From: Euprymna scolopes
Taxonomy: Eukaryota
Reading direction: 5' to 3' (one strand)
Assembly: GCA_053919585.1 (NCBI GenBank)
Contig: CM132791.1
DNA: 64,000 nucleotides
Under the pieces are notes generated by a model, which was not told where the DNA came from, did not search any database, and saw nothing but the letters and a program-made list of their open reading frames with translations. Both the position numbers and the translations under genes were made by a program. The stretch's first letter is position 1, and each line of letters starts with the position of its first letter. Shown piece after piece: positions 223 to 20,230 of the stretch.

Positions 223-981
223 TTATTGGTTGGCAGGGGGCAAGGGTAGCGATAGTACCTTGCCCCCAACTTCGTTTCCCGAACAGTTGCGAGATATGTG
301 CCCAAACTTATTGCAGCGATAGCATTGCACTGGTCTCTTTGATTGTGGATATACACCTCTCCTATCACTCCGGCACTCTTTAGCAAAATGATTGGCCTCC
401 CCACATTTATAGCACACTGGGGTGGCATGCTTATTACTATCTGGAAGAGAGTCCACATTGCCTCCATGTCGAAAACGAGCTGCTGCTGCAATTGGTTCCT
501 GTTCCTTACAGATGTTTCGAGCTCGGGCCAATAACTCATCAGTTGACAATTCATCGATTCTTGATGATGCCCGCAACAGTTTACTGACCTCCTCGGGTAG
601 GCCTACCAAAAAAGCACAGCTTAATATTTTATCGTTGACCCCACCAAACGGTACAGATAATTTTCGCAGGTCGGCTAGGTACACGTCGACTGTTTCTTTG
701 GGTTGAAGTGTCCGGCTCGTGAACTGTTGCCACGCAACAAATGGATCTGTACCAAACGCTGTATACAGGCTCTGCTTGATTTCATCCCAGTCTGGTTCAT
801 CCCCGAGTTGTTGGTAGACTGCATAGGCCCCTCCGGTTAGCCTCAAAGGGATAACTGTGGCTGGTTCTTTAATTTTGCACAGTTTACAGATTTTCTCTGC
901 CTTTTCAATCCATTCAACGACAGCCGGTCCAGTGGTAGATCCGTCGAACTCGGGTATTAAGCGAATGTCGAATCTGTCCAT
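223..981 (-). CDS. gag: Gypsy Gag (252 aa from ATG at 981)
   Basis: FDIRLIPEFDG N-terminus; CYKCGEANHFAKEC and CYRCNKFGHISRNC zinc knuckles; no internal stops. Confidence 0.88.
   Translation of the reverse strand: MDRFDIRLIPEFDGSTTGPAVVEWIEKAEKICKLCKIKEPATVIPLRLTGGAYAVYQQLGDEPDWDEIKQSLYTAFGTDPFVAWQQFTSRTLQPKETVDVYLADLRKLSVPFGGVNDKILSCAFLVGLPEEVSKLLRASSRIDELSTDELLARARNICKEQEPIAAAARFRHGGNVDSLPDSNKHATPVCYKCGEANHFAKECRSDRRGVYPQSKRPVQCYRCNKFGHISRNCSGNEVGGKVLSLPLPPANQ
236..280 (-). promoter_or_regulatory. -1 programmed ribosomal frameshift signal (gag-pol)
   Basis: G GGA AAC in gag phase (280-274), 6-nt spacer, 10-bp stem GGGGGCAAGG/CCTTGCCCCC; -1 frame open into protease. Confidence 0.85.
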
Positions 982-1339
982 TGTTAGTAACCGCACACCA
1001 AGCGCCGAGATAGCTTAAAACCAACACAAAGTCAAGTATCTGCAGAATGTCTTCTTGGTTCCTCCTCTTCTCTTTTCTCTCTCCTAACAATCGAACACAG
1101 CGTATAATAACAAAACTCTAAAGCACGTCTGACAGCACTGACTTCTGCCAACAGTCTCGTCCTCCTCTTAACAACACAGGCTTTTTATATCGCAAAATCG
1201 TTCACCTCTATTTGCATATTCTTCTAACTCACGTGATCACTACTCTATAAATAAGAGTCTTGACCGTTTCTTTTCTTTCTTTTTATTTATTTTCGGTGAC
1301 CGACCCGCACGTGGTCTATCCAGGTAAGTCACGCATTTC

Positions 1340-6864: not shown

Positions 6865-7128
6865 NNNNNNNNNNNNNNNNNNNNNNNNNNNNNNNNNNNN
6901 NNNNNNNNNNNNNNNNNNNNNNNNNNNNNNNNNNNNNNNNNNNNNNNNNNNNNNNNNNNNNNNNNNNNNNNNNNNNNNNNNNNNNNNNNNNNNNNNNNNN
7001 NNNNNNNNNNNNNNNNNNNNNNNNNNNNNNNNNNNNNNNNNNNNNNNNNNNNNNNNNNNNNNNNNNNNNNNNNNNNNNNNNNNNNNNNNNNNNNNNNNNN
7101 NNNNNNNNNNNNNNNNNNNNNNNNNNNN
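6865..7128. other. Assembly gap (N run)
   Basis: Run of N. Confidence 1.
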
Positions 7129-8455
7129 TATCAAGGCCGATCGGCCACTCAAGGATAAGGGTTAAAGAGTGTAGAGTAGTCAAAAGGACAATATAGTAAT
7201 CAATAGTAATGGAAGTTTGGTAAATTTGTTAACTTAAGTGGAACGGCTCATCAGAAACTTGTTCACGTTGGACTTGAAGACAACCATATTATAGACAGCT
7301 GGAAAGCAGGAAAAAGGAAGACAATTCCACAGGCGTGCAGTTCTAAGAAAGAAGCTTTGATCATGGAATCTATGTTTAGGTTTAGGCACAGATAAAGAGT
7401 GGGGAAAATTATTGATAATGTTTTCAGCTAGTCTAGTGTTTCTTGTGAAAGTTTGGCGAGGGGAGACCATAGATTGAAGTAGATTGAAGCTCAGTCGAAC
7501 ACTTTCCATGAAAATAACGATACATCAGAGACAAACTCGCAACATCTCTTCTGTGAGATAGAGGTTGCAGCGAAGAGAAAAGGACATTTCCCACCAGGCC
7601 ACAAAGTCTATTTTGAACCCTATCAAGGCAGGACAAGTCTTTTCTAGCAGCTCCTGCCCAGATGTGGCAACAGTATTCCATCCTTGGACGTATCTGGCTC
7701 TTATATAGATAGAGAATTGCATCAGCAGTGAGATATCTACTGGATCTATAGAAGGATCCGACCATTTTTCCAGCGGCCTTGACAACAGATTTAATGTACG
7801 TATTCCATTTAAGATCAGGAGTAAAGGTCAAGCCCAGAAGCCTGTCAAAACTTGAGGCCTCCCCAAGACGAGAGCCATTCATTTTAATTCATGCCAGATG
7901 GGGATCAGAACGTTGATGATGTAAAGATAGAAGCTTGGTTTTAGATGCATTAAAAGTAAGCAGCCACTCCTTTCCCCATTGTACAACGTGATCAAGATCA
8001 GAGGAGAGAGAATTGGAGAGAACTTGGTCGTTAACTGTCTTAGATGTGCTACCATAGATGGTAGTGTCGTCAGAAAAAATGTCTACAAATGATGTAAGGA
8101 TGTGATTTGGAAGATCATTAATGTAGATCAGGAAAAGAGTTGGGCCCAGGATGGACCCCTGAGGGACTCCAGCATTTATACTTTGAGCTTCTGATTTTTG
8201 CCCCTCAACTACTACTCTTATGAACCTATCAGAGAGAAATGATTTAATAATTGAGAAGACATTTCCAGCTATACCATAGCTGGAGATCTTGTGAAGTAAA
8301 CCTTTATGCCATACCCTATCAAAGGCCTTTGATATGTCAAGAGCAATTTGCCCTAGAAAGGTTGCTTCTGTCGAGAGATTCACTAATCCCATGAGATATA
8401 ACTGTAAGCACATCTGCTGTAGATCTAGTAGAACGGAAACCATATTGTGTGTCAC
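7129..8455 (-). mobile_element. CR1-group (Zenon-like) LINE RT, 5'-truncated and frameshifted
   Basis: QYGFRS, LDISKAFDRVWH, GVPQGSILGPTLF, FSDD, YKSQIRPRMEYCCHIW. Confidence 0.92.
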
Positions 8456-8456
8456 T

Positions 8457-8504
<48 letters not shown>

Positions 8505-8507
<3 letters not shown>

Positions 8508-9413
8508 ACATAATATTCCAAATATCATGACGCTTCCACCCCCAAACTTGACAGTTTTCTTACTACACTTTGCACTTAATCTTTCACCAATACGTCTCTT
8601 TACATTGCTTTTTTCCATCATTTCCAAATAAACTTGCTTTCATCAATGAAAAATACTTTCGCCCAATTTTCATATGTCCAAATTACATATCTGTTTGCAA
8701 ACTCTAATCTCATCTTCTTATTCTTCAAACTAACAAGTGGTTTCTTCCCTGGGGTTTGATTAAACAGCCCTATTTCTTGCAGTCGTCTAGAAACAGTCTG
8801 TCTTCACACATTAACACATAAGGTACTATTAATAATCCTTTTAATTTCTGTGCAAGACTTAAAATAGTTCTTTAATGACATACGCTGCATTATTTGATCT
8901 TTTCTTGCAAAAGTTTTGCGGGGTTTGCCGGTTTTAAAACACACTAACTATTTTGCCAATATCATTGTAGGATTTAACAACCCAGCCTACAACACTCTTG
9001 GAATGTTTCACTTTCTCTGAAATCTCTCTAATGGTGTGCTTTTCCTTGTGTAGCTTCACAATAGCTTGTCTTACAGAGTAATAAAATTTTTGGCGTTTCG
9101 ACATGGTGCTGGCTGATGTAACGTTTACAAATGACTAAGTATGACTTATTCCTGAGAAGAAATCCAAAAATTTGAAAATAGCATACTGTTTACATTGTTT
9201 TTCTCAATTTTGTCCCTTACTTTTAGACGTTCCTATTCTGAAAATAAATAAATAATTGTTATATTTCTTTTTCTATCCTTTGCAAATGATTCAAATTTTA
9301 GTATGATATTATGGATGATAACGACTACCAGTTGTCAAAATTTCAGCTTTTCACAGTTGTTATTTCTTACAAATATTAGGTTTTAAAACTTTGTCCCTTA
9401 GTTTTGGACTATA
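8505..9413 (-). mobile_element. Second Tc1 family, 5' half
   Basis: KKTVKFGGGSVMIFG and N-terminal HTH remnant; TIR direct repeats TTGTCCCTTA at ~9211 and ~9391. Confidence 0.8.
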
Positions 9414-9882: not shown

Positions 9883-9955
<73 letters not shown>

Positions 9956-9959
<4 letters not shown>

Positions 9960-10505
9960 AAACTGCGCATAATATTTCAGCTTGCTTCAAAATCCTCTCC
10001 AGTTGATCCGAAATGCAAAATAGTTCTTTAGAGAGAATTAATTCCAAAATAAGTCCAGCATGGCGATGCATATAATCCGATTGCAAAGTCTTCAGAACAA
10101 TTGAAATAATGAAAATTGTTTCTTTTTCGGGCAGTGCAATAGCCGAAAGAGAAGTAATACAAGCTTTCATGGACTGATCCCACCCCCCGCCGCTTAGCCT
10201 GCACTTAATTACTTTAAAATTTAATTTGAAATCACTTTTTCTAATTAAGCCGATGATGAAGGATCTCATACTGGTTTTCTCTCTTTTTACTATTAGGTCC
10301 CATTTGATTGAGGACAGACTTCTCTTTTGGCTCGAAAAAAAAGAAACAATTTTCATTATTTCAGCTGTTTTGAAGACTTTCCAATCGGATTATATGCATC
10401 ATTATACTGGACTTATTTTGGAATCCATTCTCTCCAAAGAACTATTTTGCATTTCAGATCAACTTGAGAGGATTTTAATGCAAGCTGAAATATTATGAGC
10501 AGTTT

Positions 10506-10509
<4 letters not shown>
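9956..10509. mobile_element. Foldback/MITE with ~175-bp terminal inverted repeats inside (TA)n
   Basis: 9956-10132 is the diverged reverse complement of 10330-10509; no coding capacity. Confidence 0.85.
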
Positions 10510-10559
<50 letters not shown>

Positions 10560-18727: not shown

Positions 18728-19072
18728 NNNNNNNNNNNNNNNNNNNNNNNNNNNNNNNNNNNNNNNNNNNNNNNNNNNNNNNNNNNNNNNNNNNNNNNNN
18801 NNNNNNNNNNNNNNNNNNNNNNNNNNNNNNNNNNNNNNNNNNNNNNNNNNNNNNNNNNNNNNNNNNNNNNNNNNNNNNNNNNNNNNNNNNNNNNNNNNNN
18901 NNATATGTTTAAAACACTTTGAAATGAGTTAAAAACATNNNNNNNNNNNNNNNNNNNNNNNNNNNNNNNNNNNNNNNNNNNNNNNNNNNNNNNNNNNNNN
19001 NNNNNNNNNNNNNNNNNNNNNNNNNNNNNNNNNNNNNNNNNNNNNNNNNNNNNNNNNNNNNNNNNNNNNNNN
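18728..19072. other. Two assembly gaps (18728-18902, 18939-19072)
   Basis: N runs. Confidence 1.
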
Positions 19073-19225: not shown

Positions 19226-19262
<37 letters not shown>

Positions 19263-19290
19263 ATTATTTTTTTACTATAATAATTAAATA

Positions 19291-19336
19291 CCTACAGACA
19301 CTAGTGTTTCATCCTTTCGGGATTCTTCAGTGCAGG
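19291..19336 (-). ncRNA. Type I hammerhead ribozyme, intact
   Basis: CCUGCA-CUGAAGA-AUCC CGAAA GGAU-GAAA-CACUAGUG-UC-UGUAGG; all core nucleotides and three stems present. Confidence 0.9.
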
Positions 19337-19627
19337 GTGTCACGATTACTACCAGTCGAACGATTCGAACCCCACGACATCTCTGGCTCGATTAGCGGGG
19401 GCCGTATCCATTCGGCTACCATTAACCGTGTGAAATAGCGTTGAATTTTAAACATTTTAATTTAAATGTTCATTACGTCAGACAGACAGTGATCAAATCG
19501 TTATACGATGATCTACGCATAAGAGCTAAATTGACCAACTTTTAATTCAACTGAAAGTGCTCAACGATAAGAAACGAATTTCTTAAAGGGGCTGTCATAA
19601 TTATTTTTTTACTATAATAATCAAATA

Positions 19628-19673
19628 CCTACAGACACTAGTGTTTCAACCTTTCGGAATTCTTCAGTGCAGG
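19628..19673 (-). ncRNA. Type I hammerhead ribozyme, second copy (weakened stem II)
   Basis: Same core; stem II reads AUUC/GGUU. Confidence 0.8.
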
Positions 19674-20230
19674 GTGTCACGATTACTACCAGTCGAACGA
19701 TTCGAACCCCGCGACACGAGACATCTCTGGCTCGATTAGCGGGGGCCGTATCCATTCGGCTACCATTAACCGTGTGAAATAGCGTTGAATTTTAAACATT
19801 TTAATTTAAATGTTCATTACGTCAGACAGACAGTGATCAAATCGTTATACGATGATCTACGTATAAGAGCTAAATTGACCGACTTTTGAGAGAGAGAGAG
19901 AGATATAATACTCAAGTAATTTGTAATATATTTTCATTTTGCACTCAGTGCTGAGATCAAAATGTCGATAAATTTACAAGAAATATTTCAGCAAAAAATT
20001 TCTCACAAATATTCAACATTTTACACAGTTTTGTATTTGGAGTAGCTTATCGACATAGGATAGATATTAAGCAAAATGAACAATAAGTAATAAAACTTCA
20101 AAATATTAACCTACATTCTAAGAGTTGCTTTAATGTCTTTTAAACTTGGTCATTAAGAATATCTACTCATTAAATATCAATTTTATTAAATTTAATTTTA
20201 TCTTCAGTAAATTGAGGATTTTTGTCATAA

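What the first reader, a model, noticed from the sequence alone, without database searches (positions are those of the whole stretch)
19260..19887. Retrozyme-like dimer: tRNA-type Pol III promoter fused to an intact hammerhead ribozyme in a 337-bp tandem unit
Seen: on the minus strand each unit has an A-box (19418-19408), a D-stem GCCG/CGGC and a B-box (19371-19361). About 25 nt later comes CCUGCA CUGAAGA AUCC-CGAAA-GGAU GAAA CACUAGUG UC^UGUAGG, a type I hammerhead with a GUC cleavage site. Stem III (ACACUAGUGU) is a 10-nt palindrome. The two copies are nearly identical (a few substitutions, one 7-bp indel) and sit between (TA)n and (GA)n. Known: non-LTR retrozymes, Schistosoma SM-alpha and newt satellite 2 are short tandem repeats with type I hammerheads, and palindromic stem III favours dimeric folding. 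Inference: this is a young, non-coding, probably Penelope-mobilised self-cleaving RNA element. Whether the family is new cannot be judged without a search.
Basis: partly seen in the sequence, partly recalled or inferred. Interest (0 to 1): 0.9.

Follow-up and report, generated by a model that had tools for sequence, protein, structure and literature searches.

The report
Self-cleaving ribozyme SINE in TA microsatellite
This is one copy of a very young, highly repeated, non-coding jumping element that carries tRNA-gene-like promoter boxes and a hammerhead self-cleaving ribozyme, and its genomic copies carry footprints showing that ribozyme-cut RNA was copied back into (TA)n microsatellites.

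Summary
Window 19260-19887 (sense on the minus strand) holds 1.86 tandem units. Each has A and B boxes at the stated coordinates and a type I hammerhead with GUC cut sites at 19297/19296 and 19634/19633. Caveats: Rfam scores the 3' hammerhead below its gathering threshold (25.6 vs 34 bits). The 5' copy has two uncompensated stem II changes. No tRNA is detected.

The locus is not unique. The 46-nt ribozyme occurs 18,834 times in this 5.9-Gb genome, and sampled units lie about 0.7% from their consensus. All 27 distinct sampled loci, and at least 5,155 genome-wide, end at the same base, 37 nt past the cut, followed by (AT)n. Only 3 end at the cut itself. Insertion 5' ends pile up at the cut (9 of 27; at least 269 genome-wide vs about 20 at a control position). 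At least 105 insertions consist of the tail alone. Ribozyme-cleaved RNA was therefore reverse-transcribed from a fixed site into (TA)n.

An abundant young Penelope-like element with the same target and end geometry is the likely helper. This link and Pol III transcription are both unproven.

The closest known relatives are Schistosoma Sm-alpha and non-LTR retrozymes, so this is a new member of a known kind. First-stage notes of this scan report similar elements elsewhere in this genome.

The parts
19260..19596 (-). Complete 337-nt unit (the 3' unit): AT-rich body, A/B-box head, hammerhead and 37-nt tail. It differs from the family consensus at 3 positions.
19597..19887 (-). 5'-truncated upstream unit (unit positions 54-337) of the 344-nt form, which carries the 7-nt insertion.
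19408..19418 (-). A box TAGCCGAATGG (10 of 11 to TRGCNNAGTGG) in the 3' unit. The D-stem GCCG/CGGC flanks it.
19361..19371 (-). B box GGTTCGAATCG (10 of 11 to GGTTCGANNCC) in the 3' unit, 35 nt after the A box.
19752..19762 (-). A box of the upstream unit.
19698..19708 (-). B box of the upstream unit. The gap from the A box is 43 nt because of the 7-nt insertion.
19291..19336 (-). Canonical type I hammerhead, identical to the family consensus. The predicted cut lies between 19297 (C17) and 19296.
19628..19673 (-). Upstream hammerhead with two uncompensated stem II substitutions, probably impaired. The predicted cut is 19634/19633.
19260..19296 (-). 37-nt AT-rich tail between the ribozyme cut and the fixed 3' end of the element (...AATAATTAT), which is the inferred start of reverse transcription.
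19597..19633 (-). Tail of the upstream unit, joined directly to position 1 of the next unit.
19717..19723 (-). 7-nt segment TGTCTCG present in the 344-nt form and absent from the 337-nt form. It is flanked by TGTC direct repeats.
19342..19429 (-). The head region folds as one long imperfect hairpin that pairs the A-box half with the B-box half, with a GC-rich apex CUCCGC/GCGGGG. It is not a cloverleaf.
19226..19259 (.). (TA)n microsatellite abutting the 3' end. It is the target or tail repeat shared by all 27 distinct sampled copies.
19888..19903 (.). (TC)8 on the minus strand, which is (GA)n on the plus strand, at the 5' junction and preceded by TATTATAT. It is filler or a second microsatellite at the truncated 5' end.

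Best explanation
The 628-bp feature is one insertion of a very young, high-copy, non-autonomous retroelement. Its nearest descriptions are an Sm-alpha-like SINE or a non-LTR retrozyme.

Anatomy. A unit is 344 nt, or 337 nt after a 7-nt deletion. It consists of:
- an AT-rich body;
- a head with tRNA-gene-type A and B boxes (unit positions 179-189 and 226-236);
- a canonical type I hammerhead (261-306, cutting after C300);
- a 37-nt AT-rich tail ending in AATAATTAT.

Shown by genomic footprints:
- Copies are dispersed into (TA)n microsatellites.
- The 3' end is fixed 37 nt downstream of the ribozyme cut. A minor alternative lies 17 nt downstream, at a second AAUUAU. The 3' end is almost never at the cut itself.
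- 5' ends are variable, as in target-primed reverse transcription, and insertions often exceed one unit.
- 5' ends stop sharply at the first base after the predicted cut.
- Mini-insertions of only the 29-37-nt tail exist.

Inferred mechanism:
1. Arrays are transcribed through several units. This may start from the internal Pol III-type promoter of an upstream unit, as proposed for Sm-alpha.
2. Adjacent ribozymes pair through the palindromic stem III into a double hammerhead and cut after C300.
3. A reverse transcriptase/endonuclease nicks (TA)n and starts cDNA synthesis at the AAUUAU site of the tail. The template is an RNA whose last ribozyme site is intact, either an uncut multimer or a religated circle.
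4. Synthesis runs off at a ribozyme-made 5' end or stalls earlier.

The enzyme is most likely that of the abundant young Penelope-like element that has the same target. The window copy itself has a damaged upstream ribozyme and is probably a dead copy.
For: Family size and age:
- 18,834 matches to the 46-nt ribozyme at up to 3 mismatches, with 0 for the reversed control.
- 7,910 heads.
- 40 scored full-unit matches at 97-100% identity on many contigs.
- Mean 0.71% divergence from the consensus.

Fixed 3' end in (TA)n:
- All 27 distinct sampled loci end at unit position 337 followed by (AT)n.
- Genome-wide there are 5,155 such termini, 190 at position 317 and 3 at the cut, position 300.

5' ends at the cut:
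- 9 of 27 loci start at positions 301-311 (binomial P about 1e-7).
- 269 genome-wide junctions join (TA)n to position 301 within a few nt, against 43 hits (about 20 true junctions) at control position 102.
- In the listed hits, at least 40 start at 301 but only 4 at 300 and about 5 at 298.
- 105 insertions consist of the tail alone.

Longer-than-unit structure: 3,828 tail-to-head junctions and arrays of 1 to 4 or more ribozymes on C1.

Ribozyme:
- Full-length match to Rfam Hammerhead_1 with every core position present.
- Double-hammerhead fold predicted for the dimer and for a tandem transcript.

Promoter boxes: two A+B pairs in the window against 0 in 100 shuffles.

Candidate helper:
- 14,709 GIY-YIG candidates, dominated by one family at 91-99% identity, with RVT_1 plus C-terminal GIY-YIG ORFs of up to 808 aa.
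- Each copy ends with a hammerhead-like motif, then 41 or about 66 nt, then (AT)n.

Literature:
- Penelope-like elements have a 30-40-bp 'tail', partial tandems and a (TA)n bias (PMC8557442).
- Their reverse transcriptase initiates internally, downstream of the ribozyme (PMC11167929).
- Sm-alpha is a Pol III-type SINE with a hammerhead that needs tandem copies (PMC6765202, PMC2770079).
Against: - SINE and Penelope-like element share no BLAST-detectable sequence. Their ribozyme modules only resemble each other (CUGAAGAAUCCCG... vs UUGAAGAAGCCCG...). The usual proof of a SINE-helper pair, a shared 3' end, is therefore missing.
- The Penelope-like element shows almost no 5' ends at its own predicted cut (11 hits).
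- No tRNA is detected by ARAGORN or Rfam, and the head folds as a rod rather than a cloverleaf.
- No insertion 5' ends map near the expected Pol III start, about position 161-167 (0 of 27).
- The absence of TTTT in the unit is not significant (P about 0.10).
- The ribozyme scores below Rfam's gathering threshold.
- Copies are too alike to give covariation, and the two old copies found (66-80% identity) have decayed stems.
- RNA-library contigs show presence only. They give neither ends nor circles.
- The second 5'-end cluster at positions 217-228 is explained only by an assumed structural stop.
Confidence: 0.72

Rival explanations
1. Classical retrozyme route. The cleaved 337/344-nt monomer is ligated into a circular RNA, and rolling-circle reverse transcription of that circle generates the tandem copies. 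Linear multimeric transcripts are not the template.
For: - The template must carry an intact 300/301 bond upstream of the start site at 337, because only 3 copies end at 300 against 5,155 at 337. A religated circle meets this condition naturally.
- A single hammerhead is less stable than the competing fold (-6.3 vs -8.0 kcal/mol). A monomer circle would therefore resist re-cleavage.
- Units within one array are more alike than units between arrays (0.85% vs 1.37%).
- Metazoan retrozyme RNAs accumulate as circles made by tRNA ligase (PMC7229834).
Against: - A circle has no 5' end, so it does not by itself predict the sharp pile-up of insertion 5' ends at 301 or the tail-only insertions. These need linear, cut RNA.
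- Eight of ten sampled arrays that contain a 337-nt unit pair it with a 344-nt unit. The indel lies between TGTC repeats, however, and could recur.
- No circular junction reads are available.
Confidence: 0.3
2. It is an ordinary LINE-dependent SINE with an (AT)n tail, mobilised by a microsatellite-targeting non-LTR element such as the R4/Dong type. The hammerhead is a passenger.
For: - The element ends in a simple repeat and sits in the same repeat, as LINE/SINE pairs with microsatellite tails do.
- It shares no sequence with the Penelope-like element.
- Dong-R4 LINEs are reported to be common in some large invertebrate genomes (PMC8967140).
Against: - No LINE carrying the 37-nt tail was found. 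This was not searched exhaustively.
- A ribozyme followed by a short tail, insertions longer than one unit, and two alternative start sites 20 nt apart match the Penelope signature (PMC8557442, PMC11167929).
- The same signature appears in the abundant Penelope-like element of this genome.
Confidence: 0.15
3. The A and B boxes are relics of the sequence the head derived from and do not drive transcription. The element is expressed by read-through from neighbouring genes or Pol II, as proposed for other retrozymes.
For: - A review of retrozymes states that metazoan retrozymes seem to lack promoters (PMC7761336).
- The head is not recognisable as a tRNA and folds as a rod.
- No 5' ends lie at the expected Pol III start.
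- T-run depletion is not significant.
- The element is present in poly(A)-selected libraries.
Against: - Both boxes match the consensus at 10 of 11 positions, with tRNA-like spacing and an intact D-stem, and none occurs by chance in the window.
- The layout, with the promoter just upstream of the ribozyme, is that of Sm-alpha, which is reported to be Pol III transcribed (PMC6765202).
- Hammerhead cutting would remove a Pol III 5' leader, so missing ends at the start site are expected.
Confidence: 0.35
4. It is a local tandem duplication or satellite with a chance hammerhead-like motif, and it is neither mobile nor catalytic.
For: The Rfam score is below the gathering threshold, and only 1.86 units are present at this locus.
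Against: - There are thousands of dispersed copies with identical ends.
- Every core nucleotide and all three helices are present.
- Insertion ends coincide with the predicted cut.
Confidence: 0.01

Closest known systems
Schistosoma Sm-alpha / Sj-alpha SINE-like hammerhead elements (Ferbeyre et al. 1998; Laha et al. 2000; summarised in PMC6765202 and PMC2770079)
   Same: - Unit of about 330-340 nt, dispersed and also in short tandems, in thousands of copies.
- tRNA-type Pol III promoter boxes lie just upstream of a type I hammerhead, so the cleaved monomer carries the promoter near its 3' end.
- A single copy cannot regenerate a full unit. Here that fits the tail-only insertions.
   Different: - Different host lineage. 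Sequence homology could not be tested because no Sm-alpha sequence was available to the tools.
- tRNAscan calls the Sm-alpha head tRNA-Gln-like (PMC2770079). This head is not called a tRNA at all.
- Strict (TA)n targeting and a fixed 3' end 37 nt past the cut are shown here. The texts I could read do not report them for Sm-alpha.
Metazoan non-LTR retrozymes (Cervera and de la Pena 2020, PMC7229834; Li et al. 2026 preprint, 10.64898/2026.07.22.740005)
   Same: - Short (170-400 bp) tandem repeats of low GC content (38% here).
- One type I hammerhead per unit and no coding capacity.
- Proposed dependence on Penelope-like elements.
   Different: - Retrozymes are described as lacking promoters (PMC7761336). 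This family has A and B boxes.
- Circular RNA, the defining intermediate, could not be tested.
- The footprints here point to linear, ribozyme-cut templates for at least part of the insertions.
Penelope-like elements: pLTR hammerheads, the 30-40-bp 'tail' and internal initiation of reverse transcription (PMC4209133, PMC8557442, PMC11167929)
   Same: - A ribozyme a few tens of nt upstream of the cDNA start site.
- Two alternative start sites (positions 337 and 317 here; two ends about 25 nt apart in this genome's own Penelope-like element).
- A 37-bp terminal extension and 5'-truncated partial tandems.
- A preference for AT-rich or (TA)n targets.
   Different: - No ORF and no sequence shared with the resident Penelope-like element.
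- The ribozyme is a full canonical hammerhead with C3-G8 and a 10-nt helix III, not the minimal variant. The resident elements have U3.G8 or U3-A8.
- For the anole element, no RNA ends at the ribozyme cut were found and cleavage was dispensable in vitro (PMC11167929). Here, cut ends are recorded in the insertions.
Newt satellite 2 and viroid-type double hammerheads (Forster et al. 1988, cited in PMC4209133)
   Same: A weak or palindromic helix III, so that two ribozymes of a tandem transcript pair into an active dimer. This is predicted here at -30 kcal/mol.
   Different: - Here helix III can also form a 3-bp hairpin with a CUAG loop, so monomer activity is not excluded.
- The newt repeat is reported to be Pol II transcribed (PMC6765202).
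Canonical tRNA-derived, LINE-dependent SINEs
   Same: An A/B-box head, small size, 5' truncation, high copy number and a simple-repeat 3' end.
   Different: - No LINE-derived tail was identified.
- It carries a ribozyme.
- Insertions are typically longer than one unit.
- Target-site duplications cannot be read inside (TA)n.

Membership tests
Hammerhead ribozyme, type I (Rfam RF00163) | Conserved core: CUGANGA, GAAA, and UH at the cleavage site | tested here: met
   CUGAAGA ... GAAA ... GUC^U, aligned full length (model positions 1-45 of 45) by cmscan. Identical in 48 sampled units.
Hammerhead ribozyme, type I (Rfam RF00163) | Three helices around the core, with helix I open-ended | tested here: met
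   Helix I is 6 bp (CCUGCA/UGUAGG). Helix II is 4 bp with a CGAAA loop. Helix III is ACACUAGUGU.
Hammerhead ribozyme, type I (Rfam RF00163) | Score at or above Rfam's gathering threshold | tested here: not met
   25.6 bits against 34 (E 8.5e-4 over 851 nt). The whole-window gathering scan returned nothing.
Hammerhead ribozyme, type I (Rfam RF00163) | Self-cleavage at the predicted bond | tested here: inconclusive
   No biochemistry was possible. Indirect support: insertion 5' ends step up exactly at the predicted bond (at least 40 at 301 vs 4 at 300 among listed hits), and there are 105 tail-only insertions.
Hammerhead ribozyme, type I (Rfam RF00163) | Compensatory base changes that preserve the helices | tested here: inconclusive
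   Copies are about 99% identical. The two diverged copies found are decayed.
Non-LTR retrozyme | Short tandem repeat unit (about 170-400 bp), low GC, one type I hammerhead per unit, no ORF | tested here: met
   Unit of 337/344 nt and 38% GC. Arrays of 1 to 4 or more units. No ORF above 44 aa.
Non-LTR retrozyme | Expression as a circular RNA monomer | not testable with these tools
   Only assembled contigs of RNA libraries were available. They show presence but no ends or back-joints.
Sm-alpha-like Pol III SINE with hammerhead | tRNA-type A and B boxes upstream of the ribozyme in the same unit | tested here: met
   Each box matches at 10 of 11 positions, with a 35-nt gap, and the ribozyme starts 24 nt after the B box. 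None in 100 shuffles.
Sm-alpha-like Pol III SINE with hammerhead | Transcription by RNA polymerase III | not testable with these tools
   No run with read ends was available. No TTTT occurs in the unit, but P is about 0.10.
Sm-alpha-like Pol III SINE with hammerhead | Sequence homology to Sm-alpha | not tested
   No Sm-alpha sequence is available in the tools, and the primary paper is not held.
Penelope-dependent non-autonomous element | Penelope-type insertion signature: 30-40-bp tail, partial tandems, AT-rich or (TA)n target, cDNA start internal to the RNA | tested here: met
   A 37-nt tail, 5'-truncated insertions longer than one unit, (TA)n on both sides, 3' ends at 337 or 317 and never at the cut.
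Penelope-dependent non-autonomous element | Sequence shared with the pLTR or 3' end of an autonomous Penelope-like element of the same genome | tested here: not met
   No BLAST hit between the unit and 30 Penelope-like loci. Only a loose resemblance of the ribozyme modules was seen. Only the dominant family and one 72%-related family were sampled.
tRNA gene or tRNA-derived head | Cloverleaf recognised by tRNA finders | tested here: not met
   ARAGORN finds none. There is no Rfam tRNA hit at E up to 10. The minimum-energy fold is a long hairpin. Only the D-arm and the two boxes are tRNA-like.

The most novel reading that the evidence does not exclude
This family is a self-promoted (Pol III) retrozyme whose insertions preserve a step-by-step record of its own mechanism.
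- The ribozyme cuts in vivo.
- The cut RNA is the template.
- cDNA synthesis starts at a fixed AAUUAU site 37 nt past the cut, on (TA)n-primed DNA.
- Single-unit copies can therefore only spawn 37-nt 'tail-only' insertions, while tandems spawn full units.

If true, it would be the first case in which the long-debated role of hammerheads in Penelope-type retrotransposition can be read directly from thousands of young insertions. It would also show that the ribozyme shapes which copies stay competent. It further implies an unannotated, possibly still active SINE-like family of about 10^4 loci in a genome class reported to have almost no SINEs. That last point holds only if the host is what its size suggests, which I did not establish.
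Probability: 0.45. Interest if true: 0.7.

Novelty: new member of a known kind. Interest (0 to 1): 0.55.

Why it matters
The function of hammerheads in Penelope-like elements and retrozymes is an open question. In the only reconstituted Penelope system, cleavage was dispensable and no cut RNA ends were seen in vivo (PMC11167929). Reviews state that animal retrozymes lack promoters (PMC7761336).

This family is young (under 1% divergence), abundant (about 19,000 ribozymes, at least 5,000 insertion sites) and targeted to a single sequence context. Its insertion ends can therefore be read cleanly. They show a fixed cDNA start 37 nt past the cut, a hard stop at the cut, and abortive tail-only products.

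That makes several questions directly testable in one natural system:
- template choice, linear versus circular;
- the rule governing the priming site;
- the 'needs a tandem to propagate' logic proposed for Sm-alpha.

The family is also a practical annotation issue. It interrupts thousands of (TA)n microsatellites and is likely to be filed as 'unknown repeat'.

Tried and rejected
- Rfam at gathering thresholds over the whole window gave nothing.
- ARAGORN on the region and on the window gave no tRNA.
- cmscan of 20 Penelope-like loci was swamped by false microRNA hits on (TA)n/(TG)n repeats and was useless for finding their ribozymes. My own descriptor found no canonical hammerhead in them. 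The UUGAAGA variant was found by eye.
Whole-genome pattern counts were used instead.
- RNA libraries were available only as assembled contigs. Summed depth on the unit is very high (up to 677,000) and near zero on the flanks. There are no ends, no strand and no reliable back-joints, so neither expression from the element's own promoter nor circular RNA is shown.
- The shuffle z-score of the homodimer energy was -1.6 and is uninformative for self-dimers.
- The absence of TTTT in the unit as a Pol III signature gave P about 0.10, which is not significant.
- I first read mixed 337/344-nt arrays as evidence against rolling-circle copying, then withdrew this. My sample was selected on the 337-nt form, the 344-nt form is the majority, and the 7-nt indel lies between TGTC direct repeats and may recur.
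- A test for ribozyme-defined 5' ends in the Penelope-like element itself gave only 11 hits. The element's own variant motif therefore leaves no such footprint.
- The primary Sm-alpha paper is not held.
- I did not try to identify the host species. The run labels are coded.
Full report
**What is at the locus**

The sense strand is the minus strand. Window 19260-19887 holds a complete 337-nt unit (19596-19260). It is preceded by a 5'-truncated unit (19887-19597, unit positions 54-337) that carries an extra 7 nt. The array sits between (TA)n at 19226-19259 on its 3' side and a (TC)8 run at 19888-19903 on its 5' side.

Each unit has an A box and a B box that match the tRNA-gene consensus at 10 of 11 positions. 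These are the only such pairs in the 64-kb window, and none appeared in 100 shuffles.

Twenty-four nt after the B box lies a type I hammerhead. Its predicted cuts are at 19297/19296 and 19634/19633.

- Rfam reports nothing at gathering thresholds.
- In E-value mode the 3' copy aligns end to end with Hammerhead_1 at 25.6 bits (gathering 34, E 8.5e-4). Every core nucleotide is in place.
- The 5' copy has two uncompensated changes in stem II. Its hammerhead fold evaluates at +0.2 kcal/mol, against -6.3 for the consensus. Only one of the two ribozymes at this locus is intact.
- No tRNA is recognised.
- The head folds as a long hairpin that pairs the A-box half with the B-box half.
- The longest ORF is 44 aa.

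**The family**

The window lies on contig C9 of a 5.9-Gb assembly. A search with the 337-nt unit gave 1,387 first-look candidates. The 40 that were scored were 97-100% identical and lay on many contigs.

Whole-genome counts at up to 3 mismatches, each with a reversed-pattern control of 0:

| Feature (46-nt pattern) | Count |
|---|---|
| Ribozyme | 18,834 |
| A-box head | 7,910 |
| Tail-to-next-unit junction | 3,828 |

The first 100 exact ribozyme hits on C1 fall into about 70 loci with 1 to 4 ribozymes each. Their spacing is mostly 344-345 nt, so the 344-nt form is the majority. The 337-nt form lacks 7 nt that lie between TGTC direct repeats.

For pattern design I took a majority sequence of the sampled non-coding units in scratch. 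Sampled units differ from it by 0.71% on average. The window's 3' unit differs at 3 positions. The ribozyme is identical in 48 sampled units.

**Insertion anatomy**

I fetched 30 loci, of which three (L022, L028, L029) are one array, leaving 27 distinct loci besides it counted once.

- Every one of the 27 ends at unit position 337 (...AATAATTAT) followed directly by (AT)n. Most also have (TA)n on the 5' side.
- Genome-wide, 5,155 termini have this form. Another 190 end at position 317, after a second AATTAT. Only 3 end at the ribozyme cut, position 300.
- cDNA synthesis therefore starts at a fixed site 37 nt (rarely 17 nt) downstream of the cut. It does not start at the 3' end that the ribozyme makes.
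- 5' ends vary, as in target-primed reverse transcription, and insertions usually exceed one unit.

The 5' ends are not random.

- Nine of 27 fall at positions 301-311, three of them exactly at 301, the first base after the cut (P about 1e-7).
- Genome-wide, 269 junctions join (TA)n to position 301 within a few nt. A control position (102) gives 43 hits, of which about 20 are true junctions.
- Among the listed hits, at least 40 start at 301. Only 4 start at 300 and about 5 at 298. This is a step at the predicted bond, not a general excess of short copies.
- At least 105 insertions are nothing but the tail (positions 301, 303-305 or 307-309 to 337) between two stretches of (TA)n. That is what run-off on an RNA beginning at U301 would give.

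A second cluster of 5' ends, at positions 217-228 (8 of 27), lies on the 3' arm of the GC-rich apex of the head hairpin. It may be a structural stop for the reverse transcriptase. This is an inference.

**Folding**

The single ribozyme is not the minimum-energy fold (-6.3 vs -8.0 kcal/mol). Two copies cofold at -30 kcal/mol into a double hammerhead, with an intermolecular 10-bp helix III and helix I formed in trans. The minimum-energy structure of a 483-nt transcript spanning two ribozymes forms the same structure.

**Candidate helper**

Pfam GIY-YIG gave 14,709 candidates.

- Of the 30 loci fetched, 27 belong to one family at 91-99% identity. Copies are often in inverted pairs.
[quoted passage not shown] This is a canonical EN+ Penelope-like element.
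- Each copy ends with a hammerhead-like motif (UUGAAGA-AGCCCG...CGGGC-GAAAC-GUU, that is U3.G8). This is followed by 41 nt or about 66 nt and then (AT)n. The element thus has two alternative ends about 25 nt apart, in the same microsatellite target.
- A 72%-related family has UUGAAAA, the U3-A8 variant described in PMC4209133.
- The unit and these elements share no BLAST-detectable sequence. Only the ribozyme modules look alike.
- The element shows almost no 5' ends at its own predicted cut (11 hits).

The helper assignment rests on shared target, geometry, abundance and age. It also rests on the published Penelope signature: a 30-40-bp tail, partial tandems and (TA)n bias (PMC8557442), and internal initiation of reverse transcription at two adjacent sites downstream of the ribozyme (PMC11167929).

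**Model**

Shown:
- a dispersed, young family targeted to (TA)n;
- a fixed cDNA start;
- ribozyme-defined 5' ends;
- tail-only products.

Inferred:
1. Arrays are transcribed through several units, possibly from the A/B boxes of an upstream unit.
2. Paired ribozymes cut after C300, which removes the promoter-bearing leader.
3. A Penelope-type enzyme nicks (TA)n and starts at the AAUUAU of a tail whose upstream ribozyme bond is intact, on either an uncut multimer or a religated circle.
4. Synthesis ends at a cut 5' end or earlier.

A single-unit copy transcribed from its own promoter could yield only tail RNA after cutting. This fits the tail-only insertions and the 'tandem needed' logic described for Sm-alpha (PMC6765202).

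I could not separate linear from circular templates. Units within an array are somewhat more alike than units between arrays (0.85% vs 1.37%). They often differ by the 7-nt indel, which may recur.

**RNA evidence**

Contigs from RNA or RNA-like libraries of the same organism hold the unit at very high summed depth. One set is labelled poly(A) RNA-Seq. The unique flanks are near zero. Contigs carry no ends or strand, and with about 19,000 copies read-through cannot be excluded. Own-promoter expression and circular RNA therefore remain untested.

**Comparison and novelty**

The architecture matches Schistosoma Sm-alpha/Sj-alpha: a tRNA-type Pol III head plus a hammerhead, in a unit of about 330 nt, dependent on tandems (PMC6765202, PMC2770079). 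It also matches the metazoan non-LTR retrozymes (PMC7229834), which a 2026 preprint links to Penelope-like elements (10.64898/2026.07.22.740005).

It differs from the general description of retrozymes in having promoter boxes (PMC7761336). It differs from the one reconstituted Penelope system in leaving clear cut-end footprints (PMC11167929).

I file it as a new member of a known kind. The mechanistic footprints are the part worth following up. First-stage notes of this scan list similar tRNA-head plus hammerhead units of 286-347 nt in other windows of the same genome. I did not verify them. They may explain why ribozymes outnumber heads.

Noticed in passing
window 27671-55062: A 27-kb array of a 43-bp satellite: about 637 copies at 98-99% matches, with a higher-order period of 129 nt.
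   Followed up: partly
genome-wide, e.g. G000:C2:7194596-7194651 and C2:25060910-25060965: At least 105 'tail-only' mini-insertions, consisting of 29-37 nt of the element's 3' tail, lie inside (TA)n microsatellites.
   Followed up: yes
L032-L060 (e.g. L050:1414-3177, minus strand): A very abundant young Penelope-like element, with 14,709 GIY-YIG candidates and ORFs of up to 808 aa. It has two alternative 3' ends about 25 nt apart in (TA)n. Its hammerhead-like motif has U3.G8. A 72%-related family (L035, L043) has U3-A8.
   Followed up: partly
L031 (G000:C553:29970-33197): The best GIY-YIG hit lies on a small contig. It reads like a bacterial uvrC-type excinuclease gene, not a Penelope-like element. 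The contig is probably from a contaminant or symbiont.
   Followed up: no
window 7889-8521 (-) and 223-996 (-): A reverse-transcriptase fragment (RVT_1, E 1.6e-24) and a gag-like zinc-knuckle ORF (zf-CCHC, E 1e-11). These are remnants of other retroelements.
   Followed up: no
window 9919-10127 and 10338-10546: A 209-nt inverted repeat, 92% complementary, with arms 210 nt apart.
   Followed up: no
window 6865-7128, 18728-18902, 18939-19072: Runs of N. The last two lie about 190 nt beyond the element's 3' flank.
   Followed up: no
L005 (-) 995-1046; L007 (+) 2708-2760 and (-) 639-691; L002 (+) 344-387: My descriptor found other hammerhead-like candidates with different stems in the flanks of SINE loci. 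This suggests further ribozyme families in this genome.
   Followed up: no
L017:1871-2195 (-) and L025:1841-2079 (-): Older copies of the same or a sister family, at 80% and 66% identity. The hammerhead core is retained but the stems have decayed. L017_old has CUGAUGA at core position 7.
   Followed up: partly
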